A program made the position numbers and the translations under genes. A stretch of DNA of 64,000 nt from sequence record OZ196212.1; one strand, 5' to 3'. Below, piece after piece: positions 14,722 through 30,863 of this stretch. Numbering within the stretch: position 1 is the stretch's first letter; every line of letters begins with the position of its first letter. The notes below the pieces were generated by a model, which was not told the origin of the DNA, did not search any database, and saw nothing but the letters and a program-made list of their open reading frames with translations.

Positions 14722-15246
14722 CTATCTGCGTCCTTTAGTTTTGTTTCTTTTTAGTTTTCGTTTGAGCTTGCGAACTTCTTTACGCTTCGCGATTTTATCA
14801 GCTCGTCGAACCGCGTCATAATCCGCAGCACAAGACGCTGCAAACGCATCGGGCTTGAATACTGGCTCTTGACCCACATATCCGAAGATCGTGCCCTTAG
14901 CTTCGTTATACGCGACGCTAGACTTGTGTTTAGGGTCTGGGTTAATGTCAACGTGTACTTCAAAGCCGCGAGGGCCGCACATTGGCTTAACTTTCAACGC
15001 ACATTCACCTGCTTTGTATACTTCGTTCATCAAGCGGCTACGAATACCATCAGTAGATGACATATAGGCTTTCTCAGTTTCGATTGTTTTGAATACTTGA
15101 GCGCCTTTACTGCCTTCCAAGTGAATTATGATTACAGTCGCGTAACTGATCATATCACTTTTTCGTTTACTGTCACACCCAACATAGATCGTGCTACTCG
15201 GGTGACTATTTTGAATCGCTGTTTCTACAGCTTCCCAATCGAACAT
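14722..15246 (-). CDS. YkuK/DUF458-like RNase H-fold protein
   Basis: IYVGCDS...YATVIIIH...LMNEV...EVHVDIN...AASCAAD. Confidence 0.75.
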   Translation of the reverse strand: MFDWEAVETAIQNSHPSSTIYVGCDSKRKSDMISYATVIIIHLEGSKGAQVFKTIETEKAYMSSTDGIRSRLMNEVYKAGECALKVKPMCGPRGFEVHVDINPDPKHKSSVAYNEAKGTIFGYVGQEPVFKPDAFAASCAADYDAVRRADKIAKRKEVRKLKRKLKRNKTKGRR

Positions 15247-15295: not shown

Positions 15296-16729
15296 TTATA
15301 AAGCGTATCGGTCGACACCGACAGTCTTCAGCATGATTTTCACTGGCTCAAGCTCACCACCCAACAGCGACGTTAGAATTGAAGGGCTGCAACCCGACAC
15401 TAACGCTGTGTTCGCTTCACCTGATTTAACAGGCACGTTGTCTAGACGACCACGCAAGTTCCAGAACACTAGTTGCGGCATTTCGTAGCCCGCGTTCGCA
15501 TACATGACTTTGATTGCATCGAAGTTCGTAGTGTTACGAGTATGCCAGCCACCGCCAGTACGAGCTTGATCGAATTCCATATCGCTCATGATAAGCAATT
15601 TGGTTGGCATTTCGTCTTGCGACAAGTTTGCCGTACGAGCGCGTTCAAGAAGAACTTCGAAGCATCGTGTGATGTTCGTGCTCATATCTTCGCCAGATCG
15701 TTGCATGTTGTCAAGACGCGACTTCAAGCTATCACCCGTCAACTTGTGAAAGTGCGGATCACTTGAGAACGAAATGAATTGATCTTTGAAGATACCCTCA
15801 TTACGTTCAGCGACGTAGATGCCAAGAGACATCGCAACTTCTTTACAAGTCACACTACCACCGTGTTCACCGTTGATACCACAGCCCATAGAGCCAGAAA
15901 CATCAACAACTGGAATCACGCGCTCGTCAGAGCCTTCCATGTAGTTCGGTAGAGCTTTCCATTGCTCATTTGCAACACGATGGTCACCCATTTTAACGCT
16001 GCGAACAACATCGTATGGGTAAACAGCACCTGCATTGATCTTCGCTTCACCTTTCACAAGCGATGTGATGTACTCACCGTATGCAGATTCAGCGTTACGA
16101 CCGAATGCTTTCTGATAGCGTGCAGACGCTACAGATGGCAGTTTGCCGAACTCGATCTCGCCCCAATTACGAGCACACATCTTCTGTTCAACAGTGTCAG
16201 ACAAAAGAGAGATCACTTTACGCCACTGCTTCGCGTTTACACCAATCGACTTGATTGTGCGCTTGAACACGACTGCGTTTTTGCTGCGCTCACGAGGAAA
16301 CCACTTAGCAGCAAGCGCGTTTTTGTCATTGACAATCGCGTGTGTCCACAGAGTGATAGCATCAGCTTCAAGAGAAGTACCGAACGCAGATACTAAGTCA
16401 TCGAAACGACCAAGTTCTGGGATCTTGCGCATAACTAGACGCGCTACTTCTGGTTGTTCTTTACACAGACGTGCAAAGATTTTGCGGAAAGTACCGCGCT
16501 CACCTGCACCGCCACGCACGTCGCGAGACCATAGCAAGATGCGAGTTGCAAGCTCAGGGTTTTCACCGAATGCGCGATTAAACGCAGTTAGTGACTGATC
16601 ATTACCGCGCATAGCGCCGATAGTGAAGAACAAGTTTAGACACTCGTTACCCGAAGTGCTGTGTGTTACTGCACCGTTTGCTGTACGTGAATCGTTAGAT
16701 TGCATAGCGTTCATAAATAAACTAGTCAT
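15296..16729 (-). CDS. DUF2828 plus vWA domain protein (TROVE/Ro60-like architecture)
   Basis: TANGAVTHSTSG..LNLFF, RDVRGGAGER, LAAKWFPRE, GAVYPYDVV, MIDAS DVSGSM and SDMEFD; ATG 16729 has a GGAG RBS. Confidence 0.85.
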   Translation of the reverse strand: MTSLFMNAMQSNDSRTANGAVTHSTSGNECLNLFFTIGAMRGNDQSLTAFNRAFGENPELATRILLWSRDVRGGAGERGTFRKIFARLCKEQPEVARLVMRKIPELGRFDDLVSAFGTSLEADAITLWTHAIVNDKNALAAKWFPRERSKNAVVFKRTIKSIGVNAKQWRKVISLLSDTVEQKMCARNWGEIEFGKLPSVASARYQKAFGRNAESAYGEYITSLVKGEAKINAGAVYPYDVVRSVKMGDHRVANEQWKALPNYMEGSDERVIPVVDVSGSMGCGINGEHGGSVTCKEVAMSLGIYVAERNEGIFKDQFISFSSDPHFHKLTGDSLKSRLDNMQRSGEDMSTNITRCFEVLLERARTANLSQDEMPTKLLIMSDMEFDQARTGGGWHTRNTTNFDAIKVMYANAGYEMPQLVFWNLRGRLDNVPVKSGEANTALVSGCSPSILTSLLGGELEPVKIMLKTVGVDRYAL

Positions 16730-16765
16730 TGCTGTAAGCTCCAAATATCAAGGATCAGAAAAATA

Positions 16766-17356
16766 ATGTTTCATATTGTATATCAAATAACAAATTTAAT
16801 AAACAACAAAATTTACGTCGGTAAGCATTCAACCGAAAACATTCATGACGAATACATGGGTTCGGGAAAGCTTTTGCTCAGAGCCATTAAAAAGTATGGC
16901 AAGGAGAATTTCACAAAAGACATACTGTTCGTATCATTAGACGAAAAGGATGCATATAAAGCAGAACATGAGATCGTGAATGAAGATTTTGTTCTCCGTG
17001 AAGACACATATAATCTCAAAGTTGGCGGTCTTGGTGGATCATCAGGAATAGAATCTCCATGCAAAGGTCGTCAACTGAGTGAAGATACTAAACTAAAAAT
17101 GAGAAAAAGTAAACAATTTTCTCAAAAACATTTAGATTATCTCTCAACTAAATTATCTGAGTACAACAAATCTAGACAAGGTGTTCAAAGAGACGATCTA
17201 AAGGGTAACTCAAACCCAATGCATCGAGGTAATTGGCATACACCCCACGGAATATTTGAAACATCAAGCGAAGCAGCGTGTGCCATAAAATGTAGTCAAT
17301 CAACAATTGTTAGACGTTGCAAAAATCCAAATTTTGAGGATTGGTACATCAAATAA
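16766..17356 (+). mobile_element. free-standing GIY-YIG homing endonuclease (Seg-like)
   Basis: IVYQITNLINNKIYVGKH...YMGSG; AT-rich; opposite orientation to its neighbours. Confidence 0.85.
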
Positions 17357-19930: not shown

Positions 19931-20030
19931 GATTGTTACCTCTAGGTTATTAGACATAAAGGCGAGGTCGGGACTCGAACCCAAACATTGCACCATTCTC
20001 ACCATCGAGAAAGTTACACCATCTTACAGC

Positions 20031-23652: not shown

Positions 23653-23764
23653 CTGAGTGTCGTTTATACCGCGTCTCCAAGACCTGAGATACCAACTCAG
23701 CATGGGATTCGAACCCACCGACGTTTCTTGTATCGAAAGAAATTTTAAATTGCTGTAAACACTC
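23653..23764 (-). ncRNA. circularly permuted tRNA mimic (YrlA-like, element D)
   Basis: GAGTGT-TTACAGCAA...T arm GTGGG-TTCGAAT-CCCAT, then CTGAG/CTCAG hairpin...ACG-ACACTC-AG. Confidence 0.7.
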
Positions 23765-27085: not shown

Positions 27086-27200
27086 TGGCTGACCGATGCG
27101 GGACTCGAACCCACGACCACGTGCTTAACAGGCAATTAGAAATGCGGTAGCGATACTTATCAATATCATTTACGTGCTCTACCACTGAGCTAATCGGTCA
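27086..27200 (-). tRNA. tRNA-Asn(GTT)-like RNA with a 38-nt insertion in the anticodon stem
   Basis: D arm, intact CT-GTT-AA loop, T arm, GCCA; insert 27134-27171. Confidence 0.75.
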
Positions 27201-27462: not shown

Positions 27463-28011
27463 CTACTTCTCTCGCAATGTAAACAGCAGATTGCGATAAT
27501 CGAAGTTTCGTTTGTTCTTTGTATTGTAGAAGCTAGTCCAGTCGATTGCAACGGGACAATTCTTACTACCGACACGAGCAATGAATATCTCGTGTGTCGC
27601 GCTGTGCTTCGCGTTATAAGCTCTTACTCGTTTTTCATAGTGAGCTATGTATTCTGCACAAGCAGCGTTGTAATCAGCTCTAGAGAACGTCTTACCTTTC
27701 ATAAAGCGTGCATCAAGATACGGACGAATAACCCGAACGCGTTCTCCCGACCATGCCATATTAAAGCTGTTTTCAATTTCACCTAGAATTTGACCAGTCT
27801 TTAAGTTACGGCTCAGTATGACCCAACAGCGTGTACGACGATAGTCTTCAAAACGCATCACCTTAATGTGTGCATTAATGAATTCATCGCGTTTAGCGTT
27901 GCACTCAATGCGTGCTGCACGACGCTGTTCTTCAGTCATCGACTCTCGAACTTCTTTCGGATACAATGTAGCAAAGCGTTTCGGGCAATCTGCCATCGTT
28001 AGCTTTTTCAT
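27463..28011 (-). CDS. hypothetical protein
   Basis: 182-aa basic ORF. Confidence 0.7.
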   Translation of the reverse strand: MKKLTMADCPKRFATLYPKEVRESMTEEQRRAARIECNAKRDEFINAHIKVMRFEDYRRTRCWVILSRNLKTGQILGEIENSFNMAWSGERVRVIRPYLDARFMKGKTFSRADYNAACAEYIAHYEKRVRAYNAKHSATHEIFIARVGSKNCPVAIDWTSFYNTKNKRNFDYRNLLFTLREK

Positions 28012-28217
28012 ATCATACCTCTCTTGCGTTTAAGTTGCGAACGCTCAATTTGATTGAAGACTTGCTTATCTTTTGCTTTATTGCGTCGAGAATTACCCCA
28101 ACGACTTCCAGCACATACACCAAAGCGGTCTTTTTTAAGCTTCTTAGCTAACCACAATGGTACTTCGACACGAGCACGTAAGTAGTGCTTTGCGATGTCT
28201 TTATAAGTCTTGCCCAT
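28008..28217 (-). CDS. hypothetical basic protein
   Basis: GAGG RBS, MGKTYKDI start. Confidence 0.65.
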   Translation of the reverse strand: MGKTYKDIAKHYLRARVEVPLWLAKKLKKDRFGVCAGSRWGNSRRNKAKDKQVFNQIERSQLKRKRGMI

Positions 28218-28230
28218 GATAATTTCCTCT

Positions 28231-28471
28231 TGTTGCCGCTCCGTGGAATCGAACCACGTCAAACACAACACCTCGTCAGCCCAATAAGAGTTTCGAAGTA
28301 AGAGCTTACTAGCACATTAAAGCACGGGGCATTATTTCTCTCAAGCAGTTTTCGACCACCGCGTGAGCTTTCTTATCCCCAGTCCCAGTGATTCAGAACG
28401 AAACATGATAGCGAGTCATGAGTTGAACTAATGTTGGGAAAACACTGCGTATTGTACACCGAGTAAGCGGC
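28231..28471 (-). ncRNA. tmRNA-like RNA (tRNA-like domain closing ~200 nt)
   Basis: GCCGCTT/GAGCGGC acceptor, CGTGG-TTCGATT-CCACG T arm, no D stem. Confidence 0.6.
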
Positions 28472-29105: not shown

Positions 29106-29228
29106 TGGTGGAGAGTGCGGGATTCGAACCACGCGGCCAAAAGATTTACTTAGTTAGTGTTTGCAGCATGAATACTTGACAATATTCTGTCAACGTTCTT
29201 TTGCTCTACCAGACTGAGCTAACTCTCC
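29106..29228 (-). ncRNA. CCA-ended tRNA scaffold with motif insert in place of the anticodon loop (T1)
   Basis: GGAGAGT/ACTCTCC-A-CCA, D arm, AAAGA/TCTTT stem enclosing ~52 nt. Confidence 0.7.
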
Positions 29229-29234
29229 ATTTAA

Positions 29235-29374
29235 AACACATTGAGCAGGGTGCAGGATTCGAACCTGCGTCACGATCTTAGAATGATATGCTGTTTGGGT
29301 TGCTGAATACAAGCTATACAACTTGCGTTTATGCTACGTGTGCTAGCCACTACACCAACCCTGCTCAATGTGTT
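29235..29374 (-). ncRNA. tRNA mimic with 17-bp extended acceptor and motif insert (T2)
   Basis: D arm, T arm GCAGG-TTCGAAT-CCTGC, no CCA, ATTCAGCAACC. Confidence 0.75.
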
Positions 29375-29607: not shown

Positions 29608-29753
29608 TAGAGCATATTGGTCGTGCGTACTAGAATCGAACTAGTCCTACGATCTCCTAATGATATGCGTTATTGGTTGCTGAATACTTACTTGTCAGTA
29701 AGCGTTATGCTACGTGTGCTGCCACTACACCAACGCACGACCAATATGCTCTA
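29608..29753 (-). ncRNA. tRNA mimic with 21-bp extended acceptor and motif insert (T3)
   Basis: paralogous to T2; T arm ACTAG-TTCGATT-CTAGT. Confidence 0.75.
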
Positions 29754-30163: not shown

Positions 30164-30415
30164 TTACGATTGAATGATAATACCGCTTTCCGTCTCACCG
30201 CGCTCAAGAGCTGCGTGCTTAATCTGTAGTTGTGCTACTGCTTGTTGAAGTTCTGTGATCGTCTGATCATATAGCTTCATGTTGCTTTGCATGTGTTTAA
30301 TCTGATCGCTCTGCAAACCAACGATATAGGTAAGCAAGATGATGCTTTCATTATCTTGCAGTTCTTCACCGTCGTTGTATTTCTTCAGAACAGATTGGAT
30401 TGTAATATCAGCCAT
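30164..30415 (-). CDS. hypothetical coiled-coil protein
   Basis: MADITIQ start overlapping the 57B stop. Confidence 0.6.
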   Translation of the reverse strand: MADITIQSVLKKYNDGEELQDNESIILLTYIVGLQSDQIKHMQSNMKLYDQTITELQQAVAQLQIKHAALERGETESGIIIQS

Positions 30416-30863
30416 TGTTTTCAGCCCATGACAAATCGAGTGGTTCAACGTATTCGTCTACAAGTCGAACTTCGGCTTCGACGAACAAGGGAGTGATTGC
30501 ATCGTCATACGAAAGCGTGACGTGCGGAGTATAGTCAGGGTAATCGTGAGTACCACCGATAGAGATAAGGTCTTCATGACGCGCTACAAGCTCAGGACAT
30601 TTCATCTTCGCAACAACTGCGTGATTACCGTCTTGAGTTTTCCAGCAATCGATATACTCAATAGTTGCTACGAATGTCGTATCAACGGCAGGCACATCAA
30701 TTTGATTGCGACTGTATAGAACAGTGACGTGAAATTTATCTGGATCTAAAGGATTTGCTAGACGAAGCGATGTCTGCAAGCGAACTAACTCTTGTTTACT
30801 CGATTCGTCTAGTTTGATACCAACGTACGTCCCCTGACTTTCAAGGAACGTAGATAGTTTCAT
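30408..30863 (-). CDS. acb1: gp57B / Acb1 anti-CBASS 2H phosphodiesterase
   Basis: two HxT motifs (FHVTVLYS, PHVTLSY); WKTQDG, THDYPDYTPH and EYVEPLDLSW match T4 57B. Confidence 0.92.
   Translation of the reverse strand: MKLSTFLESQGTYVGIKLDESSKQELVRLQTSLRLANPLDPDKFHVTVLYSRNQIDVPAVDTTFVATIEYIDCWKTQDGNHAVVAKMKCPELVARHEDLISIGGTHDYPDYTPHVTLSYDDAITPLFVEAEVRLVDEYVEPLDLSWAENNG

What the first reader, a model, noticed from the sequence alone, without database searches (positions are those of the whole stretch)
28231..28471. tmRNA-like RNA without alanine identity or CCA
It has a 7-bp acceptor, no D stem, a wobble-rich helix ACGCAGT/GTTGTGT and a canonical T arm enclosing ~200 nt, which is the tmRNA layout. 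An internal reading frame (...VVENCLREIMPRALMC) ends in tandem stops. However, pair 3:70 is C:G, the 3' end is A-ACA, and the RNA is shorter than typical tmRNA. It could be an SmpB decoy, a tagging RNA with altered specificity, or a new class.
Basis: partly seen in the sequence, partly recalled or inferred. Interest (0 to 1): 0.7.

Follow-up and report, generated by a model that had tools for sequence, protein, structure and literature searches.

The report
tRNA-capped structured phage RNA, not tmRNA
A conserved, unannotated 240-base RNA in the tRNA cluster of KVP40-like Vibrio phages has tRNA-like ends around a large folded core; it is a new family of tRNA mimic whose function is unknown, and it is not a tmRNA.

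Summary
On the minus strand, 28471..28231 carries a 7-bp acceptor stem, a canonical T arm, no D stem and a GU-rich helix, together enclosing about 175 nt. The element is conserved in about 49 KVP40/nt-1-like Vibrio phage genomes and annotated in none of the records examined. Across 11 sequences, 93% of cells are paired (37-46% in slid controls) and 38 of 72 pairs change on both sides, supporting eight nested helices.

The tmRNA reading fails. Pair 3:70 is C:G in every member. The reading frame is shifted by single-base indels in KVP40-type phages and F86. ARAGORN and the Rfam tmRNA models do not recognise it, and no pseudoknot can be shown.

It most likely matures like a tRNA from the tRNA-cluster transcript: U-1 is invariant, CCA is encoded only in the KVP40 group, and phi-pp2 is reported to encode a CCA-adding enzyme. 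I infer that it acts as a stable protein-binding RNA.

One lead is that the phage encodes a Ro60-like protein (DUF2828, 16744..15299). Ro60 partners (Y RNAs) combine a tRNA-like module with a GNCGAA/CGAA motif, and this RNA has an invariant GUCGAA hexaloop. The link is unproven: the gene lies 11.5 kb away and the motif is absent near Ro-like genes in other phages. No transcript data were available.

The parts
28231..28471 (-). The whole RNA gene, 241 nt as given. The mature RNA probably runs from 28471 to discriminator A28234, after which CCA may be added.
   Evidence: Conservation begins 2 nt before G+1 and the helices covary. Model R1 finds one copy per genome.
28465..28471 (-). Acceptor stem, 5' strand (GCCGCUU). 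The preceding base is an invariant U-1.
   Evidence: Pairs 2:71, 4:69, 5:68 and 6:67 change on both sides across lineages, while 1:72 and 3:70 never vary. AU precedes G+1 in all sequences.
28455..28464 (-). 10-nt linker standing in for the D arm. It has no stem, and G12 G13 (28460-28459) are invariant.
   Evidence: I infer that GG contacts the T loop as G18/G19 do in tRNA.
28442..28454 (-). P2, 5' strand. This is a 12-bp helix in the anticodon-stem position, with an invariant run of G-U pairs.
   Evidence: 100% of cells are paired and 3 pairs are compensatory (AU to UA or GC).
28383..28439 (-). Arm 1: P3 (28439-28435 with 28387-28383) encloses P4 and its hairpin. The segments CAUUA and GAAUCAC are invariant.
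   Evidence: P3 has 4 of 5 pairs compensatory and P4 has 9 of 15.
28326..28381 (-). Arm 2: P5 (28381-28378 with 28329-28326) encloses hairpin P5a, which is capped by the invariant hexaloop GUCGAA (28356-28351).
   Evidence: P5 has 4 of 4 pairs compensatory and P5a has 8 of 11. The loop is identical in all 11 sequences.
28281..28312 (-). Arm 3: P6 is an 8-bp hairpin with a 16-nt nearly invariant loop, CUCUUACUUCGAAACU. A loop-loop pairing UCGAA/UUCGA with the P5a loop is possible.
   Evidence: P6 was found by the covariation scan. Pairs 166:194 and 169:191 are compensatory. The loop-loop pairing is invariant and so cannot be tested.
28260..28271 (-). P2, 3' strand (GUGUUGUGUUUG).
28242..28258 (-). 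T arm: CGUGG-UUCGAUU-CCACG.
   Evidence: 4 of 5 stem pairs are compensatory across lineages, and the loop is canonical.
28234..28241 (-). Acceptor stem, 3' strand (GAGCGGC) plus discriminator A. It is followed by ACA (28233-28231), not CCA.
   Evidence: The KVP40 group has G-CCA, 1.081.O and F86 have G-ACA, and the nt-1 group has C-AC.
28215..28230 (-). Conserved ribosome-binding site and ATG of the next gene (AGAGGAAAUUAUCAUG), directly abutting the RNA's 3' end.
   Evidence: The junction is conserved even though the next gene differs between lineages. It is a 69-aa basic protein here and in nt-1, and the phrog_15953 protein in KVP40, F86 and 1.081.O.
15299..16744 (-). Ro60-like protein gene (DUF2828+DUF7788, phrog_850). 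It is a candidate protein partner only; the link is unproven.
   Evidence: AlphaFold2 model with pLDDT 77.8 and pTM 0.75. The top 13 PDB matches are all Ro60/TROVE, with TM-scores 0.39-0.60 (11 of 13 at 0.51-0.60) and E from 6e-7 to 1e-4.

Best explanation
This is a clade-specific, highly structured, stable non-coding RNA whose two ends form a tRNA-like acceptor/T-arm domain.

Proposed mechanism:
1. It is transcribed as part of the phage tRNA cluster.
2. RNase P cuts at the invariant U-1/G+1 junction.
3. The 3' end is trimmed to the discriminator, and CCA is added by the host or phage nucleotidyltransferase where it is not encoded.
4. Cutting at the 3' end would also free the downstream mRNA just ahead of its ribosome-binding site.

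The tRNA-like cap would therefore supply processing, end protection and stability. The 175-nt three-arm core, with its invariant loops, would be the working part, most likely a binding platform for a protein. It is not translated and does not act as a tmRNA.

Shown here: the conserved structure, the tRNA-like ends, and the absence of tmRNA features. Inferred: the processing route, the stability and the scaffold role.
For: - Structure: eight nested helices are supported by covariation (93% paired; 38 of 72 pairs compensatory).
- Genomic setting: it lies inside a cluster of 26 tRNA genes on the same strand. The region is syntenic with T4's 57B(Acb1)-tRNA-rnaD-rnaC region, where two stable RNAs of unknown function are made (PMC3014915; PMC9697503).
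- 5' end: AU before G+1 is invariant.
- 3' end: CCA is encoded at exactly the right place in the KVP40 group and absent elsewhere, while almost all normal tRNAs in the window encode CCA. phi-pp2 is reported to encode a tRNA nucleotidyltransferase (PMC3468402).
- Working part: loops and junctions are invariant while stems vary.
- Copy number and spread: one copy per genome, and nothing outside the clade.
- Synteny: Vibrio phage D479 has a tRNA-like cap around a different ~230-nt interior at the same position.
Against: - No transcript evidence: no RNA run was listed for this phage, and the two RNA-Seq runs tried held no phage reads.
- The ends, CCA addition and stability are all inferred.
- The single-sequence fold is not more stable than shuffles (z = -1.1), so support rests on covariation among five lineages of one phage clade.
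- 'Scaffold' is a generic role and no partner has been shown.
Confidence: 0.6

Rival explanations
1. It is a phage Y-RNA analogue, the RNA partner of the phage's Ro60-like protein. The tRNA-like module plus a CGAA-type recognition motif would tether that ring protein to a host factor such as an exoribonuclease. Relative to bacterial YrlA the topology is circularly permuted, with the ends at the acceptor stem rather than at the Ro-binding stem. This is a specific version of the scaffold idea.
For: - The window encodes a full-length Ro60-like fold at 16744..15299. The gene was seen in nt-1, phi-ST2, F86, phi-pp2, 1.081.O and D479, and in 56 Vibrio phage records in all.
- Bacterial and phage Y RNAs combine a tRNA-like module with a GNCGAA(N0-1)G or CGAA motif (PMC4201824; PMC12135203).
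- The RNA's only invariant hairpin loop is GUCGAA, a second invariant loop holds UUCGAA, and the D479 analogue holds GACGAA.
- In mycobacteriophage Snenia a YrlA-like RNA (39 bits, E = 1e-5) lies directly downstream of the same type of Ro-like gene. In FelixO1-like Alf5 the gene abuts the tRNA cluster.
- M. smegmatis YrlA is cut by RNase P and receives CCA.
Against: - The Ro-like gene is 11.5 kb away, not adjacent.
- The protein family is in 710 phage records, while the RNA is in about 50.
- GNCGAA is absent from the gaps next to Ro-like genes in Snenia, Alf5 and an Aeromonas phage.
- A 5-base motif has roughly a 1-in-6 chance of occurring in 170 nt.
- The motif sits in a hexaloop, not in the 5' strand of a terminal stem.
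- The Rfam YrlA model does not match the RNA.
- The 110-125-nt expanded tRNA-like genes nearby are at least as good candidates for this role.
Confidence: 0.25
2. It is a cis-acting processing signal ('punctuation'). Its main job would be to recruit tRNA-processing enzymes so that the downstream mRNA is released with a defined 5' end next to its ribosome-binding site. The RNA itself would be a by-product.
For: The 3' end abuts a conserved AGAGGAAAUUAU-N-AUG in all lineages, even though the downstream gene differs.
Against: An ordinary tRNA or minihelix would suffice for that job. It does not explain a 175-nt core with eight covarying helices and invariant loops. An ordinary tRNA-Met already lies 170 nt upstream.
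Confidence: 0.08
3. It is a tmRNA relative. Either it is a tagging RNA charged with another amino acid, or it is a tRNA-like-domain decoy that titrates host SmpB, as proposed for the mycobacteriophage DS6A tRNA-like-domain-only molecule.
For: The tmRNA-like order of elements is present and there is an open frame in this phage. The upstream triplet GUC before GAA recalls the -1 triplet of E. coli tmRNA; this is from my own knowledge and was not tested. A decoy precedent is cited in PMC4131195.
Against: - No G3:U70 in any member, and the discriminator varies.
- The frame is broken by 1-nt indels in two of five lineages.
- No pseudoknots are supported.
- ARAGORN and Rfam are negative in all homologs.
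- The D-region lacks the tmRNA consensus after GG (sequence read directly).
Confidence: 0.05
4. It is a tRNA gene interrupted by a self-splicing intron or another insertion, or it is a protein-coding stretch as some public records annotate it.
For: The insert sits where tRNA introns sit. Several public records place small hypothetical CDSs over it, for example in F86 and QD01.
Against: There is no D stem, so the joined exons would not make a tRNA. No group I or II intron model matches at E up to 10. All 20 amino acids are already served by the 26 normal tRNAs. No frame is conserved and substitutions are compensatory.
Confidence: 0.02

Closest known systems
tmRNA (SsrA), tRNA-like domain
   Same: Same order of elements: 7-bp acceptor stem, unpaired D-region with GG, long helix P2, large interior, short linker, canonical T arm, acceptor 3' strand. 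It is probably matured by the same enzymes.
   Different: C3:G70 instead of G3:U70. The discriminator varies. There is no conserved tag frame and there are no demonstrable pseudoknots; the interior is three nested arms. It is 240 nt against about 360 nt (the tmRNA length is from my own knowledge). It is not recognised by ARAGORN or any Rfam tmRNA model.
Bacterial and phage Y RNAs (YrlA; Thermus phage phiLo Yrl1/2) with Ro60/Rsr
   Same: A tRNA mimic joined to a second module. It carries a CGAA-type motif (GUCGAA). A Ro60-like protein is encoded in the same genome. RNase P and CCA processing of a Y RNA is documented.
   Different: The ends are at the acceptor stem, a permuted topology. There is no D arm. 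It is twice the size. The motif lies in a hexaloop. The gene is not adjacent to the Ro-like gene. The Rfam YrlA model gives no match.
T4 species 1 and 2 stable RNAs (rnaC, rnaD)
   Same: Non-tRNA stable RNAs encoded in the syntenic tRNA cluster of a related phage, with unknown function. rnaC also ends in a T-arm plus acceptor-like 3' domain.
   Different: No sequence or structure homology was detected: R1 finds nothing in the T4 locus. Size and layout differ, since rnaC has a 45-nt 5' extension outside its tRNA-like part.
Expanded tRNA-like genes of T4-like phages ('tRNA-Pseudo' of KVP40)
   Same: Same cluster and strand, with a tRNA-like acceptor and T arm and an insert on the anticodon side. 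Some members likewise lack an encoded CCA.
   Different: Those keep a normal D arm and carry a ~50-nt insert with its own conserved hairpin (apex YUGAYAAG) and CNGCAA box. They are also found in Aeromonas and Cronobacter phages.

Membership tests
tmRNA | tRNA-like domain: acceptor stem plus T arm, with the D stem replaced by a loop | tested here: met
   Acceptor stem and T arm covary, and the 10-nt linker carries an invariant GG.
tmRNA | G3:U70 alanine identity pair | tested here: not met
   C3:G70 in 11 of 11 sequences and in the D479 analogue. A G2:U71 pair occurs only in nt-1 and VS1.
tmRNA | Conserved tag reading frame with a resume codon and an in-frame stop | tested here: not met
   The frame from GUC|GAA gives 14 codons in three lineages, 31 in the KVP40 group and 3 in F86. 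There are four 1-nt indel sites, and the stretch is the 3' strand of a covarying hairpin.
tmRNA | Pseudoknots (PK1 and others) between P2 and the T arm | tested here: inconclusive
   All supported helices are nested. One possible loop-loop pairing is invariant and cannot be tested.
tmRNA | Recognition by the ARAGORN tmRNA search and by Rfam tmRNA covariance models | tested here: not met
   Searches give no tmRNA. Searches give 10-15 bits against thresholds of 47-84.
tmRNA | 3' CCA, aminoacylation and SmpB binding | not testable with these tools
   CCA is encoded only in the KVP40 group. Charging and SmpB binding need experiments.
tRNA | Cloverleaf with D arm and anticodon loop | tested here: not met
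   ARAGORN and the Rfam tRNA model do not call it. There is no D stem and no 7-nt anticodon loop.
Y RNA (YrlA type) | Ro60 ortholog encoded nearby | tested here: inconclusive
   A Ro60-like fold is encoded in the window, but 11.5 kb away beyond the tRNA cluster rather than adjacent.
Y RNA (YrlA type) | tRNA-like module (T arm, acceptor-like stem, D arm) | tested here: inconclusive
   T arm and acceptor are present, the D arm is absent, and the topology is permuted.
Y RNA (YrlA type) | GNCGAA(N0-1)G or CGAA motif in the Ro-binding stem | tested here: inconclusive
   GUCGAA is invariant, but it sits in a hexaloop and the trailing G is not conserved. The motif is absent near Ro-like genes in three other phages.
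Y RNA (YrlA type) | Match to Rfam RF02553 | tested here: not met
   No hit on the RNA. Sub-threshold YrlA hits fall instead on junctions of neighbouring tandem tRNA-like genes.
T4 rnaC/rnaD | Homology to the T4 species 1 or 2 RNAs | tested here: not met
   Model R1 finds nothing in the T4 locus. BLAST hits are confined to Vibrio phages.
Group I intron in a tRNA gene | Match to intron models, with exons that form a tRNA | tested here: not met
   No intron family at E up to 10, and the exons lack a D arm.

The most novel reading that the evidence does not exclude
The RNA is a new, circularly permuted kind of Y RNA. It would be a tRNA-ended RNA that docks through its GUCGAA loop onto the widespread phage Ro60-like protein (DUF2828), building a phage ribonucleoprotein that redirects host RNA decay or repair during infection. 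If so, Ro/Y-RNA biology would extend to T4-like phages.
Probability: 0.25. Interest if true: 0.8.

Novelty: new variant of a known kind. Interest (0 to 1): 0.6.

Why it matters
Phage tRNA clusters are usually read only as codon-supply devices. This cluster holds a large, strongly constrained tRNA mimic that no gene finder, Rfam model or genome annotation examined here has recognised, in a phage group used for Vibrio biocontrol. It shows that the tmRNA-like layout, a tRNA-like cap on a big interior, has arisen outside trans-translation.

Together with the neighbouring expanded tRNA-like genes and a Ro60-like protein found in 710 phage records, it offers a tractable way to ask what tRNA mimics do during infection. 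The same question has stood open for T4's species 1 and 2 RNAs for decades.

Tried and rejected
**Family searches that found nothing**
- ARAGORN and Rfam, at gathering thresholds and at E up to 10, found no family for the RNA.
- Motif scans of IMG/VR returned only KVP40 and VH7D. Scans of metagenome contigs and of 185,579 bacterial and archaeal genomes returned nothing.

**Transcript evidence**
- No RNA run was listed for this phage. Two RNA-Seq runs carrying the organism label of a KVP40 holder had zero phage reads, so nothing can be said about expression.

**Models and homology**
- T4 rnaC/rnaD homology: rejected.

**Alternative readings of the sequence**
- The hammerhead-like CUGAU..CGAAAC resemblance was rejected by eye. 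The essential G is not conserved, and the segment pairs in the covarying helix P6.
- The sigma-70-like match inside the RNA (28479-28451) was dismissed because the -10 element is not conserved in nt-1.
- An alternative pairing of CAGUGU with AUGCUG was rejected in favour of P6, because the window's G-to-A change at column 166 keeps the P6 pair and breaks the alternative.

**Neighbouring genes**
- The adjacent ORFs have unknown function.
- No conserved protein partner lies next to Ro-like genes across phages.

**Literature**
- The KVP40 genome paper could not be read.

Full report
**What the window is.** The window is 100% identical to Vibrio phage 6E35.1a and its sister isolates, which are KVP40-like T4-related jumbo phages. 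The finding lies on the minus strand inside a cluster of 26 tRNA genes. The region is syntenic with T4's 57B(Acb1)-tRNA-rnaD-rnaC region: an Acb1 homolog lies at 30863..30411, and one search shows the T4 map.

**Checking the observation.**
- A 7-bp acceptor stem, GCCGCUU/GAGCGGC.
- A 10-nt linker with no D stem.
- The wobble-rich helix ACGCAGU/GUUGUGU.
- The T arm CGUGG-UUCGAUU-CCACG.
- Discriminator A followed by ACA.
- Pair 3:70 as C:G.
- An open frame ending in TAG TAA.

Exact coordinates are given. ARAGORN and Rfam call nothing there.

**Is it real?**
- BLAST finds the region in 49 phage records, all Vibrio phages of the KVP40/nt-1 type, at 69-78% identity outside the closest relatives. 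Conservation begins 2 nt before the first acceptor base.
- I aligned 11 sequences from five lineages: the window phage, the KVP40/phi-pp2/PG216/ValKK3 group, the nt-1/VS1/CZ01/QD01 group, 1.081.O, and F86.
- RNAalifold and a covariation scan of my own gave eight nested helices. These are the acceptor stem; P2 (12 bp); P3 and P4; P5 and P5a; P6; and the T arm.
- For this structure, 93.2% of cells form standard pairs, against 37-46% when the 3' partners are slid by 1-3 columns. Of 72 pairs, 38 change on both sides, and no shuffle out of 500 reaches any of the five measures.
- Every helix except the invariant loop-loop candidate has compensatory changes.
- The single sequence does not fold better than shuffles (z = -1.1), so support comes from comparison rather than thermodynamics.
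- The stems vary while several loops and junctions are invariant: GG in the D-region, CAUUA, GAAUCAC, the hexaloop GUCGAA, AUGCU, and CUUCGAAAC.

**Is it a tmRNA?** The order of elements matches, but the defining features fail.
- Pair 3:70 is C:G in all 11 sequences, and the discriminator is A, G or C.
A 1-nt insertion in the KVP40 group shifts it to 31 codons with a different end. An extra base in F86 stops it after 3 codons.
- The same stretch forms hairpin P5a, where close relatives differ by compensatory changes.
- No pseudoknot could be supported.
- ARAGORN finds no tmRNA in the window or in five homologous loci. Rfam tmRNA models reach only 10-15 bits.
- Published exhaustive surveys that covered RefSeq viruses found ssrA only in mycobacteriophages and Bacillus phage G (PMC4131195; PMC11915505).

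**How it is probably made (inferred).**
- U-1 is invariant. My own knowledge is that bacterial RNase P favours U at -1.
- CCA is encoded at the correct position in the KVP40 group and not in the others. Nearly all ordinary tRNAs in this window do encode CCA.
- phi-pp2 is reported to encode a tRNA nucleotidyltransferase (PMC3468402).
- The 3' end abuts a conserved ribosome-binding site, whichever gene follows. Cutting at the tRNA-like 3' end would therefore also define the next mRNA's 5' end.
- No transcript data could be obtained.

**Spread.**
- An inner-domain covariance model (R1) finds one copy per genome in family members. It finds nothing elsewhere in the window, in T4's tRNA/rnaC/rnaD locus, or in an Aeromonas T4-like, a FelixO1-like and a mycobacteriophage locus.
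- Motif scans of IMG/VR, metagenome contigs and the genome collection add nothing.
- Vibrio phage D479 has, at the syntenic position, the same kind of cap: GCCCCAU/GUGGGGC, a T arm, C3:G70, and the same downstream ribosome-binding site. It encloses about 230 nt that neither R1 nor BLAST relates to the family.

**Context: the RNA is not alone.**
- The cluster holds four expanded tRNA-like genes of 110-125 nt, with intact acceptor, D and T arms and a ~50-nt insert in place of the anticodon loop. KVP40 annotates its counterparts as tRNA-Pseudo.
- The same class occurs in nt-1, D479, an Aeromonas T4-like phage and Cronobacter phage LPCS28.
- Their inserts share a covarying hairpin capped by YUGAYAAG, followed by a CNGCAA box.
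- The 26 ordinary tRNAs already cover all 20 amino acids.

**A candidate partner.**
- The ORF at 16744..15299 (DUF2828+DUF7788, phrog_850 'RNA-binding protein') gives an AlphaFold2 model with pLDDT 77.8. Its top 13 PDB matches are all Ro60/TROVE proteins, including Thermus phage phiLo Ro60, D. radiodurans Rsr and Xenopus and human Ro60. TM-scores are 0.39-0.60 (11 of 13 at 0.51-0.60) and E runs from 6e-7 to 1e-4.
- Ro60 proteins bind Y RNAs. Bacterial and phage Y RNAs combine a tRNA-like module with a GNCGAA(N0-1)G or CGAA recognition motif, and M. smegmatis YrlA is cut by RNase P and gains CCA (PMC4201824; PMC12135203).
- The RNA's invariant hexaloop is GUCGAA, and D479's analogue contains GACGAA.
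- This Ro-like family is in 710 phage records, including nt-1, phi-ST2, F86, phi-pp2, 1.081.O and D479.
- In mycobacteriophage Snenia a YrlA-like RNA (39 bits, E = 1e-5) lies directly downstream of the gene. In FelixO1-like Alf5 the gene abuts the tRNA cluster. In the Aeromonas phage three expanded tRNA-like genes lie 2 kb downstream.

**Against the link.**
- The distance is 11.5 kb.
- The protein family is far wider than the RNA family.
- GNCGAA is absent from the gaps next to Ro-like genes in the three other phages.
- The motif is short and lies in a loop rather than in a terminal stem.
- The Rfam YrlA model does not match.
- The expanded tRNA-like genes compete as partners.

I therefore rate the Y-RNA reading at about 0.25.

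**Verdict.** The element is a previously unrecognised family of tRNA mimic: a tRNA-like cap on a three-arm core, specific to KVP40-like vibriophages. It most likely matures through the tRNA pathway and acts as a stable protein-binding RNA. The phage Ro60-like protein is the best but unproven candidate partner.

Noticed in passing
window 27090-27199, 29109-29228, 29243-29364, ~29618-29739 (all minus strand): Four expanded tRNA-like genes of 110-125 nt, with intact acceptor, D and T arms and a ~50-nt insert in place of the anticodon loop. The inserts share a covarying hairpin capped by YUGAYAAG and a CNGCAA box. The same family is in KVP40 ('tRNA-Pseudo'), nt-1, D479, an Aeromonas T4-like phage and Cronobacter LPCS28. 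All 20 amino acids are already covered by the normal tRNAs, and the function is unknown.
   Followed up: partly
window 15299-16744 (-): A DUF2828/DUF7788 protein folds as a full-length Ro60 (TROVE ring plus vWA). The family is in 710 phage records across many phage groups and often lies next to tRNA clusters or a YrlA-like RNA.
   Followed up: partly
window 14725-15246 (-): Immediately downstream of the Ro-like gene is an RNase H-like (PF04308/DUF458) protein. This pairing was not seen in the Aeromonas, FelixO1-like or mycobacteriophage loci checked.
   Followed up: partly
L015:5472-5744 (Vibrio phage D479): At the syntenic position, D479 has a 7-bp acceptor stem plus T arm enclosing about 230 nt with no detectable similarity to the family. 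It has the same downstream ribosome-binding site, contains GACGAA, and is a singleton by BLAST.
   Followed up: partly
window 29170-29296 (-); L001:571-635; L004:812-881; L002:838-910: Sub-threshold Rfam YrlA hits (23-30 bits) fall on the junctions of tandem expanded tRNA-like genes: the T arm and acceptor 3' strand of one, then the acceptor 5' strand and D arm of the next. In the two cases checked by eye, the two acceptor strands are 5-of-7 complementary. This may be a by-product of the tandem arrangement.
   Followed up: no
window 30411-30863 (-): An Acb1 (anti-CBASS, T4 57B-like) homolog lies just upstream of the tRNA-like region, as in T4.
   Followed up: no
window 16766-17356 (+): A GIY-YIG (SegE-like) homing endonuclease gene on the opposite strand lies directly beside the start of the Ro-like gene.
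   Followed up: no
window ~23700-23725 (-) and ~19958-19990 (-): Two orphan T-arm-like hairpins (GUGGG-UUCGAAU-CCCAU and UUGGG-UUCGAGU-CCCGA) have no matching 7-bp acceptor 5' strand. They may be tRNA remnants.
   Followed up: no
window 28011-28217 (-): A 69-aa very basic protein (MGKTYKDIAKHY...) is encoded directly after the RNA here and in the nt-1 group, but not at this position in KVP40, F86 or 1.081.O. It has no family match.
   Followed up: partly
public records of F86 (VPHF86_0308), QD01 (QD01_344) and KVP40 (start of KVP40.0317): Small hypothetical CDSs, or CDS starts, annotated across the RNA are probably spurious, because no frame is conserved there.
   Followed up: partly
L018:4447-4827 and L019:5741-5990: An ACAGCAA(U) motif recurs three times in the gap after the Snenia Ro-like gene and twice between tRNAs in Alf5. 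It resembles the CNGCAA box of the expanded tRNA-like genes. It could be promoter-related or chance; no statistics were done.
   Followed up: no
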